Part shown: positions 7,384 to 14,729 of the stretch, piece after piece
Numbering within the stretch: position 1 is the first letter of the stretch
How the letters are laid out: each line of letters opens with the position of its first letter
Assembly (NCBI RefSeq): GCF_006345805.1
Contig: NW_021826179.1
Span: 1 to 14,729, forward strand
DNA from: Octopus sinensis
Lineage: Eukaryota
Reading direction: 5' to 3'
Length of the DNA stretch: 14,729 nt
The notes under the pieces: generated by a model
Seen by the model: the letters and a program-made list of their open reading frames with translations, nothing else
The model's database searches: none
Told to the model about the DNA's origin: nothing
Translations under genes and position numbers: made by a program

Positions 7384-8139
7384 TTAACATTTACATTTAC
7401 AGGCACTAATTATAGGATACTGAGCATGAATCCAGTTACAAATTTTAGCATCGGGCCAGCAATGGAAACGAAGTAAAATTATAGTTTGTGAATAGCTAGG
7501 TTTACAGCGCATGCCTGGTGGTAAGGAACACGACCGTCCTCGTTGGTGACACTGGCCTTCTTTGATCCAGCGGGGCCAGAAGCGTATACCCAGGTCCTTC
7601 CACGTATATATGACAGGACAATATGTGTACGTCCGGATAAACTTAGCCACTTTTCTCTTCGCTTCTGTCTTAACTTTCAAATCCAACTGTCGGAAACGTC
7701 TCCCAGTTTCATCCTTGAGGTTAATGCGCCCGAATCGAGCTAGAAATGGGGGCCGTCTCCCCACAGGGTAACCCCTCTGAAAGCGCAAGGCGAGGGTCCC
7801 GTTAGGCTTTGTGATACTTTCCTTCGGTCGTTCCACAGACATGAATTCGTCGATAAAAAACCGTCCGAGTAGTTTACGTAAAATCTCCGGCTTTAGGTTT
7901 TCAGCCCTCGGATCGTGTTTTTTGTCGGGTTTCTCGTTTAGGTTGACAGGAAGTGAGTCAGAAGGCACTATGGGAAATTTAGGCCGTTTGGTGACGACAT
8001 TCTTTTCATGACTCTTTCGCAATAGGTTGTAATCACTGAAGCTACTGCTCCCGCTGCCGGCAACACACACAACACAGAGAAGAAGAAGAGGAAGGGATCC
8101 AGCAAGCTTCGAACTCAACATATCCAGATCAGAGCGCAT
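7384..8139 (-). CDS. nog: Noggin (secreted cystine-knot BMP antagonist), 251 aa, coding sequence uninterrupted
   Basis: Hydrophobic signal peptide (LAGSLPLLLLCVVCVAG); clip segment PSDSLPVNLNEKPD..HDP..LRKLLG...FMS; basic segment; C-terminal CPVIYTWKDLGIRFWPRWIKEGQC...SCSLPPGMRCKP...LRFHC...CNWIHAQYPIISACKCKC with all 9 noggin cysteines. ATG at 8139 has A at -3; an alternative in-frame ATG is at 8121. Confidence 0.96.
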   Translation of the reverse strand: MRSDLDMLSSKLAGSLPLLLLCVVCVAGSGSSSFSDYNLLRKSHEKNVVTKRPKFPIVPSDSLPVNLNEKPDKKHDPRAENLKPEILRKLLGRFFIDEFMSVERPKESITKPNGTLALRFQRGYPVGRRPPFLARFGRINLKDETGRRFRQLDLKVKTEAKRKVAKFIRTYTYCPVIYTWKDLGIRFWPRWIKEGQCHQRGRSCSLPPGMRCKPSYSQTIILLRFHCWPDAKICNWIHAQYPIISACKCKC

Positions 8140-8181: not shown

Positions 8182-8293
8182 AATAATAATAATGATGATG
8201 ATGAAGATGATGATGATGAAGATGATGATGATGAAGAGGATGATGATGATGAGGATGAGGATGATGAGGATGATGATGATGATGAGGATGATG

Positions 8294-8360
<67 letters not shown>

Positions 8361-8383
8361 GGATGATGAGGATGATGATGATG

Positions 8384-8417
<34 letters not shown>

Positions 8418-8510
8418 GGATGATGATGATGATGATGATGAATGATGATGATGGTGATAATGATGATGATGGATGATGATGATGAGGGTGATGATGATGA
8501 TGATGATGAT
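8182..8510. repeat. (AAT)/(GAT/GAG)n trinucleotide repeat
   Basis: Directly visible; contains frame-breaking interruptions (GAAT, GGAT). Confidence 0.97.
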
Positions 8511-8567
8511 GAGAAGAAGACGTGGTACATGTAAAGTATTAGCAGACGCTCAGGGAAGGAAAGAAAG

Positions 8568-8810
8568 ATAGATTGAGAGAGAGACAGAGAGACAGAGAGA
8601 GAGACAGAGAGAGAGAGAGACAGACAGAGAGAGAGACAGAGAGACAGAGAGACAGAGAGAGAGAGACAGAGAGAGAGATTAGCTTAATAGAGACGGACAG
8701 AAACAGAGATAAAAAGATAGCTACAGAGAGGGGGAGGGGGAGAGAGAAGGGGAGGGGAGAGAAAGTGAAATAGAAAGAAAGATATTTAACAGCTAGATAG
8801 ACAGACAGAC

Positions 8811-8861
<51 letters not shown>

Positions 8862-8918
8862 ACGAAAGAAAGAAAGAAAGCGACTTAATAGCTAGATAGA
8901 TATGTAGACAGATAGATG

Positions 8919-8972
<54 letters not shown>

Positions 8973-9061
8973 GATAGATAGATAGATAGATAGACATGGA
9001 TAGGCAGATAGATAGACAATTAGATAGATAGAAAGATAGATAGATAGATAGACAGATAGAC

Positions 9062-9104
<43 letters not shown>

Positions 9105-9108
9105 CAGT

Positions 9109-9196
<88 letters not shown>

Positions 9197-9200
9197 AAGA
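8568..9200. repeat. Compound (GA/GACA)n, (GAAA)n and (GATA)n microsatellites
   Basis: Directly visible: GA/GACA about 8568-8770, GAAA about 8810-8880, GATA about 8895-9195. Confidence 0.97.
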
Positions 9201-9643
9201 AAGACAGCACGTTATCCCACCCCAATAGGCCATCCTTTCTTCGCCGAAAATACATACAAGAACAAGAACAACAACAGCAGCAAGCAACAGCAACCACAAC
9301 AACAAAAGCAACAACTCCGTGGTGACGGAAGCAACAATAGTTTAATGGCCGATTCGTCCGACAAACAACCAAAAACAGGAAGTGTTACGAAGATTTTTTT
9401 GGAACAATAAACTGAAATAACTCAAACAAGGGAGCGAGTCAATTTAGAAAGAGGTCTGGGTGAGGTTAGTGTGTATAAAATGAATATTTATGACACCATA
9501 CTGCCGAGATTTAGCTTGTTTCGATGACAGCTGAATGTCAATGGCGGCAGAGAAACTGTCGTCTGCTCTCTTCCAGTTTTATTTTCAAACAATGCGTAAT
9601 GTTTTACTATGGCTGCCCACCTCTCCCGTTCCATCCCTTCGCC

Positions 9644-9691
9644 GTTTATTTAAATAAACTTCCTGAGTTGGTTGTTTTATACTTCCTGAGT
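9644..9691 (-). promoter_or_regulatory. Candidate noggin core promoter: TATAAAA flanked by two ETS-type CAGGAAGT sites
   Basis: Minus strand ACTCAGGAAG-TATAAAA-CAACCA-ACTCAGGAAGT-TTATTTAAATAAAC. TATA at 9681-9675; 11-bp direct repeat ACTTCCTGAGT at 9658-9668 and 9681-9691; it lies in the only sizeable unique island upstream of noggin. Confidence 0.4.
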
Positions 9692-9694
9692 CGT

Positions 9695-10550
9695 AGAGAG
9701 AGAGAGTGTGTGTGTGCGTGTGTGTGTGTATCCGTGTGTGTGTGTGTGTATCCGTGTGTGTGTGTATCCGTGTGTGTGTGTGTGTATCCGTGTGTGTGTG
9801 TATCCGTGTGTGTGTGTGTGTGTGTATGAATGTGTGTGTGTGTGTGTGTAAAAACGCATCTGTTCTTGCTCCTGTGTGTGTGCATACGTATATATGCATC
9901 TATGCATGTATGCATGTAGGATGTATGTATGTGTTTGTATATATATGTATGTATGTACGCATTTATGTATGTATGTATGTATGTATGTATGTATGTATGT
10001 ATGTATGTATGTATGTATGTATGTATGTATGTATGTATACATCTATGCATGTATGTATGTATGTTTGTATGTATGTATGTTTGTATGTATGTATGTATGT
10101 ATGTATGTATGTATGTATGTGTGTACGCATCTATGCATGTAGGATGTAGGTATATTTGTTTGTATGTATGTGTGTGTTTATATATATATGTATGTATGTG
10201 TGTATGTATGCGTGTATGTATGCATGTATGTATGTATGTATGTATGCATCTATGCATGTATGCATGTAGGATATATGTATGTTTGTATGTATGTGTGTGT
10301 ATATATATGTATGTATGTACGCATCTATGTATGTATGTATGTATGTATGTATGTATGTATGTATGTATGTATGTATGCATGTAGGATGTATGTATGTATG
10401 TTTGTGTGTATGTATGTACGCATCTATGTATGTATGTGTGTATGTATGTATGCATGCATGTATGCATGTATGCATCTATATATGTATGTATATATGTATG
10501 TACGTATGTATGTATGCATGTATGCATATATGTATACGTGTATGTGTGTA
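9695..10550. repeat. (GA)/(GT)n with TATCC(GT)n sub-units, then (TATG)n with recurring GCATCTATGCATGTAGGAT motifs
   Basis: Directly visible. Confidence 0.96.
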
Positions 10551-10552
10551 TA

Positions 10553-10955
10553 GAACATCATTGGCCTGGGGCTAAACAACAACAACAGTTATAGCCACTA
10601 ATACTAACTACTATAATGCACATTAGTCAATGTAGTCCTAGATACACTATGCCTGAATAAAAGATGGGGTGGTCACAGCTGGAACATCTTTGATCATTGG
10701 TCTGTCTGGATCAGGACTGACCTGGGGCTAAACAACAACAACAACTATAGCCACTAATACTTGCTACTATACATTAGATAATGTAGTCCTAGATACACTA
10801 TGCCTGAATGAAAGATGAGATGGTCACAGCTGGAACATCTTTGATCATGGGTCTGTCTGCTGGATCAAGACTGACCTGTGGCTAAACAACAACTATAGCC
10901 TCTAATACTAACTACTATGCTGTACATTAGATAATGTAGTCCTAGATACACTATG
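10553..10955 (+). repeat. Tandem repeat of a ~155-bp unit (about 2.6 copies), each containing a retroposon-like 3' end with a (CAA)n tail
   Basis: CCTG(G/T)GGCTAAACAAC at 10565, 10721 and 10875 (periods 156 and 154); AATGTAGTCCTAGATACACTATG occurs three times. Confidence 0.9.
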
Positions 10956-11075
10956 TCACTATGATGGTCAGAGCTAGGATGCGATCCTCCTGATACAGGA
11001 AGTCTTTGAGGGCGCCCAAGGAAACCAAGGGATCACGAGCCACCCATCTCACCGGCAGCAGTTACTAAATATCTT

Positions 11076-14000
11076 GGATCTGTTTCTTAAACGAGGGACA
11101 TATTCATACGGCACAGAATGTGTTCACCTCAATAGACGTCATTGATTGGTTGAAATTGCAGAAATTGAAAAAAAAATATATATCTTACAAACTATAGAAT
11201 TTTCTCAATAAAGCCAAGAGAAAAGATGTTTTATAACACATTCTACCAGTATACGAAGTTTAAAATTGTTTAGTTACGTGGAATTATTTTTAAAAACTGC
11301 CGTTCAAACCGAAAATCCGTTTAGGTTAGGGTTAGGTTATGGGTGGGGGTAAGGGTATCTTTTTTTTCTTCAGAAATGTAAATAAACCCAATCTCTTTCT
11401 TAAACGAGGACATATTCATACGGCACAGAATGCTTTCACCTCAATAGACGTCATTGATTGGTTGAAATTGCAGAAATTGAAGAAAAACAACAACAAATAT
11501 CTTACAAACTATAGAATTTTCTCAATAAAGCCAAGAGAAAAAGATTTTTATAAACACATTCTACCAGTATACGAAGTTTAAAAGTGTTTAGTTACGTGGA
11601 AATTATTTTTAAAAACTGCCGCTCAAACCGAAAAGATCCGTTTAGGTTAGGGTTAGGGTTAGGGGTGGGGGTAAGGGTATCTTTTTTTTCTTCAGAAATG
11701 TAAATAAACCCAATCTGTTTCTTAAACGAGGGACATATTCATACGGCACGGAATGCTTTCACCTCAATAGATGTCATTGATTGGTTGAAATTGCAGAAAC
11801 GGAAGAAAAAAAACAACAAATATCTTACAAACTATAGAATTTTCTCAATAAAGCCAAGAGAAAAAGATGTTTTATAAACACATTCTACCAGTATACGAAG
11901 TTTAAAAGTGTTTAGTTACGTGGAAATTATTTTTAAAAACTGCCGTTCAAACCGAAAAGATCCGTTTAGGTTAGGGTTAGGGTTAGGGGTGGGGGTAAGG
12001 GTATCTTTTTTTTCTTCAGAATGTAAATAAACCCAATCTGTTTCTTAAACGAGGGACATATTCATACGGCACGGAATGCTTTCACCTCAATAGATGTCAT
12101 TGATTGGTTGAAATTGCAGAAAGAAACGGAAGAAGAAAAAACAACAAATATCTTACAAACTATAGAATTTTCTCAATAAAGCCAAGAGAAAAAGATGTTT
12201 TATAAACACATTCTACCAGTATACGAAGTTTAAAAGTGTTTAGTTACGTGGAAATTATTTTAGAAAACTGCCGGTCAAACCGAAAAGATCTCTGTTTCTT
12301 AAACGAGGGACATATTCATACGGCACAGAATGTTTTCACCGCAATAGACGTCATTGATTAGTTGAAATTGCAGAAATTGAAAAAAAAATATATATCTTAC
12401 AAACTATAGAATTTTCTCAATAAAGCCAAGAGAAAAAGATGTTTTATAAACACATTCTACCAGTATACGAAGTTTAAAATTGTTTAGTTACGTGGAAATT
12501 ATTTTTAAAAACTGCCGTTCAAACCGAAAAGATCCGTTTAGGTTAGGGTTAGGGTTATGGGTGGGGGTAAGGGTATCTTTTTTTTCTTCAGAAATGTAAA
12601 TAAACCCAATCTCTTTCTTAAACGAGGGACATATTCATACGGCACAGAATGCTTTCACCTCAATAGACGTCATTGATTGGTTGAAATTGCAGAAATTGAA
12701 GAAAAACAACAACAAATATCTTACAAACTATAGAATGTTCTCAATTAAGCCAAGAGAAAAAGATGTTTTATAAACACATTCTACCAGTATACGAAGTTTA
12801 AAAGTGTTTAGTTACGTGGAAATTATTTTTAAAAACTGCCGCTCAAACCGAAAAGATCCGTTTAGGTTAGGGTTAGGGTTAGGGGTGGGGGTAAGGGTAT
12901 CTTTTTTTTCTTCAGAAATGTAAATAAACCCAATCTGTTTCTTAAACGAGGGACATATTCATACGGCACGGAATGCTTTCACCTCAATAGATGTCATTGA
13001 TTGGTTGAAATTGCAGAAACGGAAGAAGAAAAAAAACAACAAATATCTTACAAACTATAGAATTTTCTCAATAAAGCCAAGAGAAAAAGATGTTTTATAA
13101 ACACATTCTACCAGTATACGAAGTTTAAAAGTGTTTAGTTACGTGGAAATTATTTTTAAAAACTGCCGTTCAAACCGAAAAGATCCGTTTAGGTTAGGGT
13201 TAGGGTTAGGGGTGGGGGTAAGGGTATCTTTTTTTTCTTCAGAAATGTAAATAAACCCAATCTGTTTCTTAAACGAGGGACATATTCATACGGCACGGAA
13301 TGCTTTCACCTCAATAGATGTCATTGATTGGTTGAAATTGCAGAAACGGAAGAAGAAAAACAACAAATATCTTACAAACTATAGAATTTTCTCAATAAAG
13401 CCAAGAGAAAAAGATGTTTTATAAACACATTCTACCAGTATACGAAGTTTAAAAGTGTTTAGTTACGTGGAAATTATTTTAGAAAACTGCCGGTCAAACC
13501 GAAAAGATCTCTGTTTCTTAAACGAGGGACATATTCATACGGCACAGAATGTTTTCACCGCAATAGACGTCATTGATTAGTTGAAATTGCAGAAATTGAA
13601 CAAAAAAACAACAAATATCTTACAAACTATAAAATTTTCTCAATAAAGCCAAGAGAAAAAGATGTTTTATAAACACATTCTACCAGTATATGAAGTTTAA
13701 AAGTGTTTAGTTACGTGGAAATTATTTTTAAAAAATGCCGTTCAAACCGAAAAGATCCGTTTAGGTTAGGGTTAGGGTTAGGGGTGGGGGTGGTGGTAAG
13801 GTAAGGGTATCTTTTTTTTCTTCACAAATGTAAATAAACCCAATCTGTTTCTTAAACGAGGGACATATTCATACGGCAGGGAATGCTTTCACCTCAATAG
13901 ATGTCATTGATTGGTTGAAATTGCAGAAACGGAAAAGAAAAAAAACAACAATATCTTACAAACTATAGAATTTTCTCAATAAAGCCAAGAGAAAAAGATG

Positions 14001-14637
14001 TTTTATATAACACATTCTACCAGTATACGAATTTAAAAGTGTTTAGTTACGTGGAAATTATTTTAGAAACTGCCGGTCAAACCGAAAAGATCTCTGTTTC
14101 TTGAACGAGGGACATATTCATACGGCACACGAATGTTTCACCACGCCAATAGAACGTCATTGATTAGTTGAAATTGCAGAAATTGAACAAAAAAAACAAA
14201 AATATCTTCAAACGTATATAATTTTCTCATAAAGCCAAGAGAAAAAGATGTTTTATAACACATTCTATTCTACCAGTATAAAGTTTAAAGGTGTTTAGTT
14301 ACGTGGAAATTATTTTAAAAAACTGCCGATCAAACCGAAAAGACCCAAATATCTTACAAACTATAGAATTTTCTCAAAAATAAGCCAAGAGAAAAAGATG
14401 TTATATAAACACATTCTACCAGTATATGAAGTTTAAAAGTGTTTAGTTACGTGGAAATTATTTTAAAAAACTGCCGGTCAAACCGAAAAGACCCAAATAT
14501 CTTACAAACTATAGAATTTTCTCAATAAAGCCAAGAGAAAAAGATGTTTTATAAACACATTCTACCAGTATATGTTTAAAAGTGTTCAGTTGCGTGGAAA
14601 TTATTCTAAAAAACTGCCGGTCAAACCGAAAAGATCC
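11076..14637 (+). repeat. 3.56-kb tandem array of 13 units (144-334 bp) with a shared right end and TTAGGG-containing modules; probably derived from a mobile element
   Basis: Every unit ends in AAAAA(C)TGCCGNTCAAACCGAAAA(GA)(T/C)C, at 11318, 11639, 11963, 12290, 12535, 12859, 13186, 13509, 13758, 14092, about 14345, about 14493 and 14637. Confidence 0.95.
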
Positions 14638-14729
14638 GCTTTACCTAGTGGAATTTGAAAAACGTTGACTGTGGTGAAAGAGGAGGGCTTGGCCAAAAAG
14701 GAAAACGTCTGTCTGTCTTCAGCTCTCTA

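What the first reader, a model, noticed from the sequence alone, without database searches (positions are those of the whole stretch)
11076..14637. Array of 13 units with one fixed right end and three discrete left start points
Define modules A (TTAGGG/G-rich plus T-run, ~73 bp), B (~105 bp, begins ATCTGTTTC) and C (~148 bp, begins CAAATATC, ends ...CAAACCGAAAAGATCC). The array reads BC-ABC-ABC-ABC-BC-ABC-ABC-ABC-BC-ABC-BC-C-C. A constant terminus with variable truncation at the other end is not what simple unequal crossing-over produces. It is the pattern expected from rolling-circle (Helitron/Helentron) concatemers, serial target-primed retrotransposition as in telomeric retroelement arrays, or repeated template switching from an element end. 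Two junction types fall at ATC(C/T)-GTTT-like microhomologies. The array may capture a mobile element turning into satellite DNA.
Basis: partly seen in the sequence, partly recalled or inferred. Interest (0 to 1): 0.72.

Follow-up and report, generated by a model that had tools for sequence, protein, structure and literature searches.

The report
Octopus satellite array with higher-order repeats
The 13-unit array is real, but it is an ordinary non-coding satellite in an Octopus sinensis contig that grew by copying a four-unit, 1.2-kb block, so the "three start points" come from only two odd junctions copied several times, not from a mobile element re-inserting.

Summary
Observation confirmed. 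Window 11079-14636 reads BC-ABC-ABC-ABC-BC-ABC-ABC-ABC-BC-ABC-BC-C-C, and each A module carries (TTAGGG)2-3 plus a G-run.

The window is the whole unplaced contig VCDQ01007265.1 of Octopus sinensis. The array ends 93 bp from the contig end and starts 2.9 kb upstream of a noggin gene.

The units are not independent. Units 1-4 and 5-8 form a ~1.2-kb higher-order repeat with 5 substitutions in ~1212 bp. Units four apart differ by a mean of 1.25 substitutions, against 6-12 at other spacings. All A-less BC units are one variant type, and each internal one follows the same C variant. So the three internal C|B junctions are one event copied, and so are the two C|C junctions.

No Helitron, Helentron or retroelement hallmark was found:
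- no terminal hairpin, subterminal inverted repeats, CTRR end, poly(A) or target-site duplication
- no coding capacity, tRNA or Rfam hit
- no other copy in the contig or in any searchable collection

O. bimaculoides shares the left flank up to GGATCT and has no array there.

One point is unexplained. Both odd junctions and the array's right edge use the same breakpoint, ...AAAAGATC|, just 5' of the G-quadruplex-prone telomere-like tract.

Verdict: an ordinary lineage-specific satellite, low interest.

The parts
11079..14636 (+). Whole tandem array, 13 units: BC-ABC-ABC-ABC-BC-ABC-ABC-ABC-BC-ABC-BC-C-C
   Evidence: There is no copy of A, B or C anywhere else in the contig.
11079..12290 (+). Higher-order repeat copy 1 (units 1-4: BC, ABC, ABC, ABC; 1212 bp)
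   Evidence: Compared with copy 2: 5 substitutions and 12 indel events covering 17 alignment columns. Mean substitutions are 1.25 at a spacing of four units, against 6-12 at other spacings.
12291..13509 (+). Higher-order repeat copy 2 (units 5-8; 1219 bp)
   Evidence: Units pair 1=5, 2=6, 3=7 and 4=8. A2 and A6 share the TTATGGG variant.
13510..14092 (+). Partial third block: unit 9 (BC, type 1) plus unit 10 (ABC, type 3/4, with an 11-nt G-rich insertion in A)
   Evidence: unit 9 is closest to unit 5 (6 substitutions) and unit 10 to units 4 and 8 (3 substitutions). One search shows the A10 insertion.
14093..14345 (+). Unit 11 (BC, type 1, heavily indel-laden)
   Evidence: 14-16 indel events against any other unit, but only 7-16 substitutions. 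It shares the type-1 markers CCGC-like and TTAGTTG.
14346..14636 (+). Units 12 and 13 (C only, 148 and 143 bp), each preceded by the identical junction AAAAGACC|CAAATATC
   Evidence: The shared GATC-to-GACC change shows the two C|C junctions are copies of one event.
12283..12298 (+). C|B junction AAAAGATC|TCTGTTTC. The same junction occurs at 13509|13510 and 14092|14093. It equals the ABC sequence minus exactly the 70 nt CGTTTAGG...AAACCCAA, with no microhomology.
   Evidence: It is always preceded by the C variant TTTTAGAAA(A)CTGCCGGT and followed by the type-1 B variant.
13186..13262 (+). Representative A module: CG-TTTAGG-(TTAGGG)2-3-GTGGGGGTAAGGG, then TATC-T8-CTTCAGAAATGTAAATAAACCCAATC. 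The other A modules open units 2, 3, 4, 6, 7 and 10.
   Evidence: A canonical G-quadruplex motif is present in 6 of 7 A modules. TTAGGG is the experimentally determined cephalopod telomere motif (PMC13218726).
11078..11081 (+). Left boundary. The 4 nt ATCT are shared by the unique flank (GGATCT) and the A-end (CAATCT). Orthology with O. bimaculoides ends after 11081.
   Evidence: alignment: the flank is orthologous up to ...TCTTGGATCT, then O. sinensis continues GTTTCTTAAACG (array) while O. bimaculoides continues AGAACTCAGTAG.
14637..14729 (+). Right flank, 93 bp to the contig end. Its first ~15 nt (CGCTTTACCTAGTGG) weakly resemble the A start.
   Evidence: The position-specific test gives p of about 0.016-0.025 for A and is not significant for B or C. 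The whole flank is not A-like (292 of 1000 shuffles) and does not match the O. bimaculoides continuation.

Best explanation
This is a short, non-coding, lineage-specific satellite (tandem repeat) array in Octopus sinensis. Its ~324-bp monomer (A+B+C) carries an embedded telomere-like tract.

The array grew by tandem duplication of multi-unit blocks, through unequal exchange or replication slippage between repeats. That produced a four-unit, ~1.2-kb higher-order repeat [BC-ABC-ABC-ABC].

The three length classes come from only two non-homologous events:
- a precise 70-nt gain or loss of A at the C|B junction
- a precise ~175-nt gain or loss of A+B at the C|C junction

Each event was then copied along with its neighbouring units. 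The A-less unit type is also the unit that abuts the unique left flank, so the internal BC units may simply be copies of the array's edge unit.

Shown: the module order, the higher-order repeat, identity by descent of the junctions, absence of mobile-element hallmarks, and absence of the array at the orthologous flank in O. bimaculoides.

Inferred: the duplication mechanism, the direction of the two events (deletion or insertion), and the idea that the shared breakpoint ...AAAAGATC| reflects fragility beside the G-quadruplex-prone, telomere-like tract. No function is implied; the array most likely evolves neutrally.
For: - Order and coordinates.
- Higher-order repeat: block 1 against block 2 gives 1202 matches and 5 mismatches. 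Mean substitutions are 1.25 at a spacing of four units, against 7.3, 10.2, 9.0 and 6.3 at spacings 1, 2, 3 and 5.
- Diagnostic variants: B1, B5, B9 and B11 are one type. C4, C8 and C10 (TTTTAGAAA(A)CTGCCGGT) always precede the C|B junction. Both C|C junctions share GACC. A2 and A6 share TTATGGG.
- Non-coding: no Rfam hit inside the array and no tRNA anywhere in the window. ORFs are 41 aa or shorter, apart from one 80-aa ORF with no relatives. A six-frame query also found nothing.
- No inverted repeats or hairpins at unit or array ends.
- Lineage-specific: the O. bimaculoides orthologue shares the 151/157-bp repeat and the flank up to GGATCT, then diverges. Argonauta has no trace of the array.
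- Both features are established for satellites: higher-order repeats arise by co-amplification of adjacent monomers, and degenerate telomere tracts are often interspersed in satellites (PMC5615363).
Against: - Homologous unequal crossing-over cannot itself create the two odd junctions, and both use exactly the same left breakpoint as the array's right edge. For two independent events, the chance of sharing one position in a ~325-bp unit is roughly 1 in 325. This hints at a site-specific process that was not identified.
- The octopus genome could not be searched, so a dispersed parent element is not excluded.
- The array lies 93 bp from the end of a small unplaced long-read contig. Most differences between copies are indels: 17 of the 22 differing columns between blocks 1 and 2, and 14-16 indel events in unit 11. 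Copy number and fine detail may therefore include assembly error.
Confidence: 0.7

Rival explanations
1. The array is a mobile-element concatemer. ABC would be a non-autonomous Helitron/Helentron-type or retroposon-type element whose C end (or, on the minus strand, whose 5' end TCTTTTCGG...) is a true terminus. The array would record repeated initiation or termination at that terminus, with truncated copies, and would now be turning into a satellite.
For: - One exact boundary (...AAAAGATC|) is shared by all junction types and by the array edge.
- Read on the minus strand, this gives a constant 5' end with variable 3' truncation. [quoted passage not shown]
- On the minus strand the unit can be phased to begin with TC after an A (GGA|TCTTTTCGG).
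- Mollusc genomes are known to carry satellite-like arrays inside Helentron-derived elements (PMC7492417).
Against: - After correcting for the higher-order repeat, only two truncation classes exist, each arising once.
- There is no hairpin at the 3' end on either strand (z-scores from -0.8 to +2).
- There is no terminal CTRR, no 11-mer inverted match between the left and right flanks, and no palindrome in the right flank.
- There are no terminal inverted repeats and no poly(A) or target-site duplication; the C|B junction keeps both TC dinucleotides.
- There is no ORF with relatives and no tRNA-like head.
- There is no other copy or fragment in 11 kb of neighbouring DNA.
Confidence: 0.1
2. The units grew instead of shrinking, with telomerase involved. 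An older 148-bp C repeat, still present at the right edge, would have acquired B. A double-strand break at the C|B junction was then repaired by inserting telomeric repeats plus ~42 nt of filler, creating A. The longer unit was later amplified. The locus could be subtelomeric, with the G-strand pointing towards the contig end. This differs from the best explanation only in the direction and cause of the two events.
For: - A is a clean 70-nt insertion or deletion relative to BC, with no loss or duplication of flanking bases. From my own knowledge (Nergadze et al. 2004, 2007; not checked here), telomeric-repeat insertions at break sites are reported to look like this.
- A starts with irregular then regular telomere repeats: TTTAGG, TTAGGG, TTAGGG.
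- All tracts share one orientation, pointing towards the nearby contig end.
- The shortest and most diverged units sit at the array edge, as expected if edges are older.
- Degenerate telomere tracts are common in subtelomeric satellites (PMC5615363).
Against: - There is no outgroup copy to set the direction of the events.
- The leftmost unit is BC abutting unique DNA, not C.
- The high divergence of the right-edge units is mostly indels and may be assembly error.
- The chromosomal position is unknown because the contig is unplaced.
- The noggin contig in O. bimaculoides is also unplaced, so it gives no positional information either.
Confidence: 0.25
3. Part of the structure is an assembly artefact. 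The number and order of units, or the duplicated 1.2-kb block, could result from mis-collapse or over-expansion of a repeat at the end of a long-read contig.
For: - The array lies 93 bp from the end of a 14.7-kb unplaced contig.
- Differences between copies are mostly single-base indels in homopolymers: 17 of 22 differing columns between blocks 1 and 2.
- Unit 11 has 14-16 indel events.
- Four of the five substitutions between the blocks are transversions, which is unusual for natural mutation.
Against: - The module differences are 70 and ~175 nt with precise, reproducible junctions, which is beyond consensus error.
- The blocks carry consistent diagnostic substitutions in a coherent pattern.
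- An artefact would change copy number, not the existence of the three unit classes.
Confidence: 0.1

Closest known systems
Satellite DNA with higher-order repeat organisation (for example primate alpha satellite)
   Same: It is a head-to-tail non-coding array. A multi-monomer block is amplified as one unit, so monomers one block apart are far more alike than neighbours. Array edges are more diverged. Growth by unequal exchange is the standard model (PMC5615363).
   Different: The array is very short (3.6 kb, about 2.5 blocks). Its monomers differ by whole modules (A or A+B missing) and not only by point variants. Genome-wide abundance is unknown.
Subtelomeric (telomere-associated) satellites with interspersed degenerate telomere repeats
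   Same: Every full monomer carries a short, partly degenerate tract of the host telomere motif TTAGGG in a single orientation (motif from PMC13218726). Such tracts are frequent in subtelomeric satellites (PMC5615363).
   Different: The chromosomal position is unknown. A single-copy developmental gene (noggin) lies only 2.9 kb away. No terminal telomere array is present in the contig.
Helentron-derived non-autonomous elements (HINEs) carrying satellite-like arrays in the Pacific oyster (Cg_HINE; PMC7492417)
   Same: The host is a mollusc. The array is a short satellite-like array of a few to about a dozen monomers in gene-rich DNA, with a microsatellite ((GTAT)n, 9888-10551) upstream.
   Different: None of the defining substructures is present: no subterminal inverted repeats, no 3' palindrome and no conserved right flank. 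The upstream microsatellite and flank are present in O. bimaculoides without the array, so they are not part of one mobile unit.
Head-to-tail telomeric retroelement arrays (Drosophila HeT-A/TART; telomere-associated Penelope-like elements of rotifers)
   Same: The copies are head-to-tail with one constant end, and telomere repeats lie between the full-length units.
   Different: There is no reverse transcriptase, no poly(A), and only two truncation classes, each a single event. If the G-strand had primed synthesis, the constant end should be the T-run side of A and the C end should vary, which is the opposite of what is seen (inference from the sequence).

Membership tests
Satellite DNA with higher-order repeats | Head-to-tail tandem copies of a monomer, non-coding | tested here: met
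   for the array. No coding or RNA-family signal.
Satellite DNA with higher-order repeats | Monomers one block apart are much more similar than adjacent monomers | tested here: met
   Mean of 1.25 substitutions at a spacing of four units, against 6.3-12 at other spacings. Blocks 1 and 2 differ by 5 mismatches in ~1212 bp.
Satellite DNA with higher-order repeats | High copy number or long arrays elsewhere in the genome | not testable with these tools
   No octopus genome can be searched by DNA here. Exact scans of metagenome and viral collections gave 0 hits.
Helitron | 5'-TC and 3'-CTRR termini, insertion between A and T | tested here: not met
   No CTRR at the last bases of the unit on either strand. 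On the minus strand CTAA lies 3 nt in from the end (...CCTAAACG). A TC start is possible only by shifting the phase.
Helitron | Hairpin 10-20 nt upstream of the 3' end | tested here: not met
   DNA folds of both unit ends on both strands give energies of -0.5 to -3.4 kcal/mol and z-scores of -0.8 to +2.0.
Helitron | Rep/helicase partner or dispersed copies | tested here: inconclusive
   Neither was found in this 14.7-kb contig. The rest of the genome is not searchable here.
Helentron non-autonomous element (HINE) | 11-12 bp subterminal inverted repeats in the left and right flanks | tested here: not met
   0 inverted 11-mer matches (up to 1 mismatch) between 9501-11078 and the right flank; shuffles give a mean of 0.66. 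Only 93 bp of right flank is available.
Helentron non-autonomous element (HINE) | [quoted passage not shown] | tested here: not met
   No perfect palindrome with a stem of 5 or more. The fold of 14590-14680 has a z-score of 0.02.
Serial target-primed retroelement array | Poly(A) or simple-repeat tail at the constant 3' end; target-site duplications | tested here: not met
   The constant end is ...CCGAAAAGATC with no tail. The junctions are clean with no duplication.
Serial target-primed retroelement array | Many independent 5' truncation points | tested here: not met
   There are only two truncated classes, each identical by descent with shared flanking variants.
Serial target-primed retroelement array | Reverse transcriptase or a polymerase III (tRNA/5S/7SL) head | tested here: not met
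   No Pfam, Rfam or tRNA signal in the array and no ORF with relatives.
Subtelomeric telomere-associated satellite | Host telomere motif embedded in the monomers in a uniform orientation | tested here: met
   13 matches, all on the + strand and all in A modules, against 0.05 expected. The motif identity comes from PMC13218726.
Subtelomeric telomere-associated satellite | Position next to a chromosome end | not testable with these tools
   The contig is unplaced and contains no terminal telomere array.

The most novel reading that the evidence does not exclude
The shared breakpoint ...AAAAGATC| is a genuine, repeatedly used terminus. The locus would be a subtelomeric array in which a short non-autonomous element, or a broken chromosome end, was repeatedly extended. 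Telomerase would add TTAGGG repeats at the C end, and synthesis would then restart at different internal positions. That would make it a cephalopod counterpart of telomere-associated retroelement or template-switch arrays, caught while becoming a satellite.
Probability: 0.07. Interest if true: 0.6.

Novelty: new member of a known kind. Interest (0 to 1): 0.2.

Why it matters
As it stands, it matters little. It is one more species-specific satellite in a very repeat-rich cephalopod genome, on an unplaced contig.

It is useful as a worked example. Unit-length heterogeneity with an apparently fixed end can arise when one or two odd junctions are copied inside a higher-order repeat, so junctions must be tested for identity by descent before a special mechanism is invoked.

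The exact re-use of one breakpoint beside a G-quadruplex-prone telomere-like tract could be of modest interest for how interstitial telomere repeats destabilise or seed tandem arrays. That would hold only if the pattern recurs at other loci.

Tried and rejected
1. Known RNA gene or SINE head in the unit: no Rfam hit inside the array. The mir-297-type hits elsewhere are microsatellite artefacts, all below gathering score. ARAGORN found no tRNA.
2. Coding potential: the 80-aa ORF has no relatives. Exact look-ups of the recurrent 39-aa and 35-aa ORFs found nothing. A six-frame chimeric query gave 6640 word candidates, none with E of 0.001 or better.
3. Other copies: none in the contig. Exact scans of metagenome contigs (two patterns) and viral contigs gave 0 hits. 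These collections are not expected to hold octopus DNA, so this says little.
4. Empty-site test with O. bimaculoides: the left flank is orthologous, but the 207 bp that follow match neither the O. sinensis right flank nor the array. A clean empty site could not be shown.
5. Right flank as a decayed A module: the whole flank is not significant (292 of 1000 shuffles). Only the first ~15 nt are suggestive (p about 0.02).
6. The 21-nt match at the O. bimaculoides contig end as an inverted array copy: it does not extend inward.
7. The 19-nt, 79% inverted match between B and the right flank (I4/I5): it is not above shuffles (139 of 500).
8. Microhomology-mediated origin of C|B through ATCYGTTT: rejected, because the junction GATC|TCTGTTTC keeps 2 nt more than that model predicts.
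9. Argonauta hians noggin locus: no array.
10. Literature: the library held no paper on cephalopod satellites; the two papers that matched 'cephalopod' plus 'satellitome' concern other animals.
11. L003 could not be read in the scripting sandbox, so its first 360 nt were transcribed.
Full report
**What is there.** The window is the complete 14,729-bp contig VCDQ01007265.1, reversed, of assembly GCA_006345805.1. Published work identifies that assembly as Octopus sinensis. There are 13 C ends, 11 B starts and 7 A modules, in the order BC-ABC-ABC-ABC-BC-ABC-ABC-ABC-BC-ABC-BC-C-C, spanning 11079-14636. TRF finds periods of 323/324, 244-253 and 148 bp with scores of 700-2200. Each A module begins CG-TTTAGG-(TTAGGG)2-3-GTGGGGGTAAGGG and continues TATC-T8-CTTCAGAAATGTAAATAAACCCAATC. 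Telomere-motif dimers occur 13 times against 0.05 expected, all on the + strand and only in A. TTAGGG is the one experimentally determined cephalopod telomere motif (PMC13218726). Six of the seven A modules contain a canonical G-quadruplex motif.

**The units are not independent.** Units 1-4 (11079-12290) and units 5-8 (12291-13509) align with 1202 matches and 5 mismatches. The full difference list is 5 substitutions plus 12 indel events. Over the shared BC part of units 1-8, units four apart differ by a mean of 1.25 substitutions. The means are 7.3, 10.2, 9.0, 6.3, 9.5 and 12 at spacings of 1, 2, 3, 5, 6 and 7 units.

Diagnostic variants agree:
- B1, B5, B9 and B11 form one type (GTTTTC; CCGC and TTAGTTG in B5 and B9, TTAGTTG also in B11).
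- B2 matches B6, and B3 matches B7.
- B4 and B8 differ only in the length of the A-rich tail.
- C4, C8 and C10 share TTTTAGAAA(A)CTGCCGGT.
- A2 and A6 share TTATGGG.

So the array is a four-unit, ~1.2-kb higher-order repeat [BC-ABC-ABC-ABC]. It is present twice and followed by a reduced third block (units 9-10), a further type-1 BC unit (unit 11) and two C-only units.

**Consequence for the "three start points".** Every internal C|B junction (12290|12291, 13509|13510, 14092|14093) has the identical sequence AAAAGATC|TCTGTTTC. Each lies between the same C variant and the same B variant, so all three are one event copied by block duplication. The two C|C junctions share AAAAGACC|CAAATATC, including the same T-to-C change, so they are also one event copied. 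The first BC is simply the unit that abuts the unique left flank. The A-less internal units are of that same type, so they may be copies of the edge unit. Only two non-canonical junctions need explaining, not six. Co-amplification of adjacent monomers is the textbook origin of higher-order repeats (PMC5615363).

**Tests of the mobile-element readings.**
- The array has no Rfam hit, and no tRNA is found in the window.
- ORFs are 41 aa or shorter, apart from one 80-aa ORF, which has no relatives. A six-frame query against 5.8 billion clustered proteins also found nothing.
- Single-strand DNA folds of both unit ends on both strands are no better than shuffles (z-scores -0.8 to +2.0).
- There are no terminal inverted repeats.
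- The features that define Helentron-derived HINEs are subterminal inverted repeats, a 3' palindrome and a conserved right flank (PMC7492417). All are absent: 0 inverted 11-mers between the flanks and no palindrome. No CTRR sits at a unit end on either strand.
- The constant end is ...CCGAAAAGATC, with no poly(A). BC equals ABC minus exactly the 70 nt CGTTTAGG...AAACCCAA, with both flanking TC dinucleotides kept. So there is no target-site duplication, and the ATCYGTTT motif flanking A was not used as microhomology.
- No fragment of A, B or C occurs in the other 11 kb of the contig.
- If the telomeric G-strand had primed copying, the T-run side of A should be the constant end and the C end should vary. 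That is the opposite of what is observed (inference from the sequence).

**Comparative evidence.** The neighbouring ORF at 7384-8139 (-) is a noggin gene (Pfam E = 8.9e-54). Its O. bimaculoides orthologue lies on a 6.7-kb unplaced contig (L003). That contig shares the 151/157-bp repeat and the unique left flank. Orthology runs through ...TCTTGGATCT and stops exactly where the O. sinensis array begins. O. bimaculoides then continues for 207 bp to its contig end with sequence that matches neither the array nor the O. sinensis right flank. The array is therefore absent from that position, but a clean empty site cannot be shown. The Argonauta hians noggin locus has no trace of the array.

**What remains unexplained.** The C|A, C|B and C|C junctions and the array's right edge all break after the same nucleotide...AAAAGATC|. 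For the two independent odd junctions, coincidence at one position of a ~325-bp unit has a chance of roughly 1 in 325. Three explanations are possible:
- nested insertions at one site (C, then BC, then ABC), with A perhaps being a telomerase-mediated insertion at a break, since it is a clean telomere-repeat-led indel
- two deletions starting at a fragile point just 5' of the G-quadruplex-prone tract
- a true element terminus

The direction of the events cannot be set without outgroup copies. The first ~15 nt of the right flank weakly resemble the start of A (p about 0.02). If that is real, even the last unit runs on in phase and the array does not end at C. Separately, the first 21 nt of the O. 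bimaculoides contig resemble the A-end/B-start junction in inverted orientation. The match does not extend inward.

**Caveats.** The array sits 93 bp from the end of a small unplaced contig. Differences between copies are mostly homopolymer indels, and unit 11 has 14-16 indel events. Copy number and single-base details may therefore include long-read consensus error. The 70-nt and ~175-nt module differences are too large to be explained that way. Genome-wide distribution is the decisive missing piece.

**Verdict.** The best reading is an ordinary, lineage-specific, higher-order-repeat satellite with an embedded telomere-like tract (confidence about 0.7). It is a new member of a known kind and of low interest.

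Noticed in passing
window 7384-8139 (-): Intact single-exon noggin gene (251 aa, Pfam Noggin E = 8.9e-54). Its closest relatives are O. bimaculoides noggin-2 (same 90% cluster) and Argonauta hians noggin-2 (78%). In both O. sinensis and O. bimaculoides it sits on a small unplaced contig surrounded by repeats.
   Followed up: partly
window 5446-6213 and 6540-7155; L003 3075-3525: A ~31-bp minisatellite (TTTTAACCAGGGGTGAATTTAGGTCAAAATA) downstream of noggin forms its own larger periods: 122 bp repeated ~4 times, and a 254-bp unit repeated 3 times at 98-100% identity. The 31-bp array is conserved at the same position in O. bimaculoides. This is a second example of block-wise repeat growth in the same contig.
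   Followed up: partly
window 10565-10955; L003 343-694: A 151-bp repeat (2.5 copies) lies immediately upstream of the array's left flank. It is conserved as a 157-bp repeat (2.3 copies) in O. bimaculoides, so it predates the array and is unrelated to it.
   Followed up: yes
window 1168-1247 and 1278-1357 (-): Two adjacent 80-nt copies (75% identical) look by eye like tRNA-derived SINE heads on the minus strand. The reverse complement shows A-box-like GTGGCTTAGTGG and B-box-like GTTCGATTCC. ARAGORN calls no tRNA there.
   Followed up: no
window 1928-2022, 4330-4424, 4826-4867 (inverted); L002 11736-11827: A ~95-bp dispersed repeat is present three times in the contig and matches the Argonauta hians noggin locus at 84-89% identity. 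By eye, a related sequence is also in O. bimaculoides L003 at about 1800-1900. It is probably part of an old octopod interspersed element, usually next to microsatellites.
   Followed up: no
L003 1-21: The first 21 nt of the O. bimaculoides contig (AAAGAAACCCAGCTGTTTCTT) resemble the A-end/B-start junction of the O. sinensis array (AAATAAACCCAATCTGTTTCTT), but in inverted orientation. The match does not extend inward. It could be chance, or the edge of a related repeat that broke the assembly.
   Followed up: partly
window 277-765, 2868-3335, 4044-4824, 8192-9204, 9706-10551: About a quarter of the contig is microsatellite: (TA)n, (GAT)n, (ATG)n, (TAGA)n, (GTAT)n and (GT)n. These produce long spurious ORFs (His, Asp and Met runs) and dozens of sub-threshold mir-297, mir-3149 and mir-466 Rfam matches, which are composition artefacts.
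   Followed up: yes
window 11079-14636: Differences between repeat copies are mostly 1-nt homopolymer indels, and 4 of the 5 substitutions between the two blocks are transversions. That pattern fits residual long-read consensus error better than natural divergence.
   Followed up: partly
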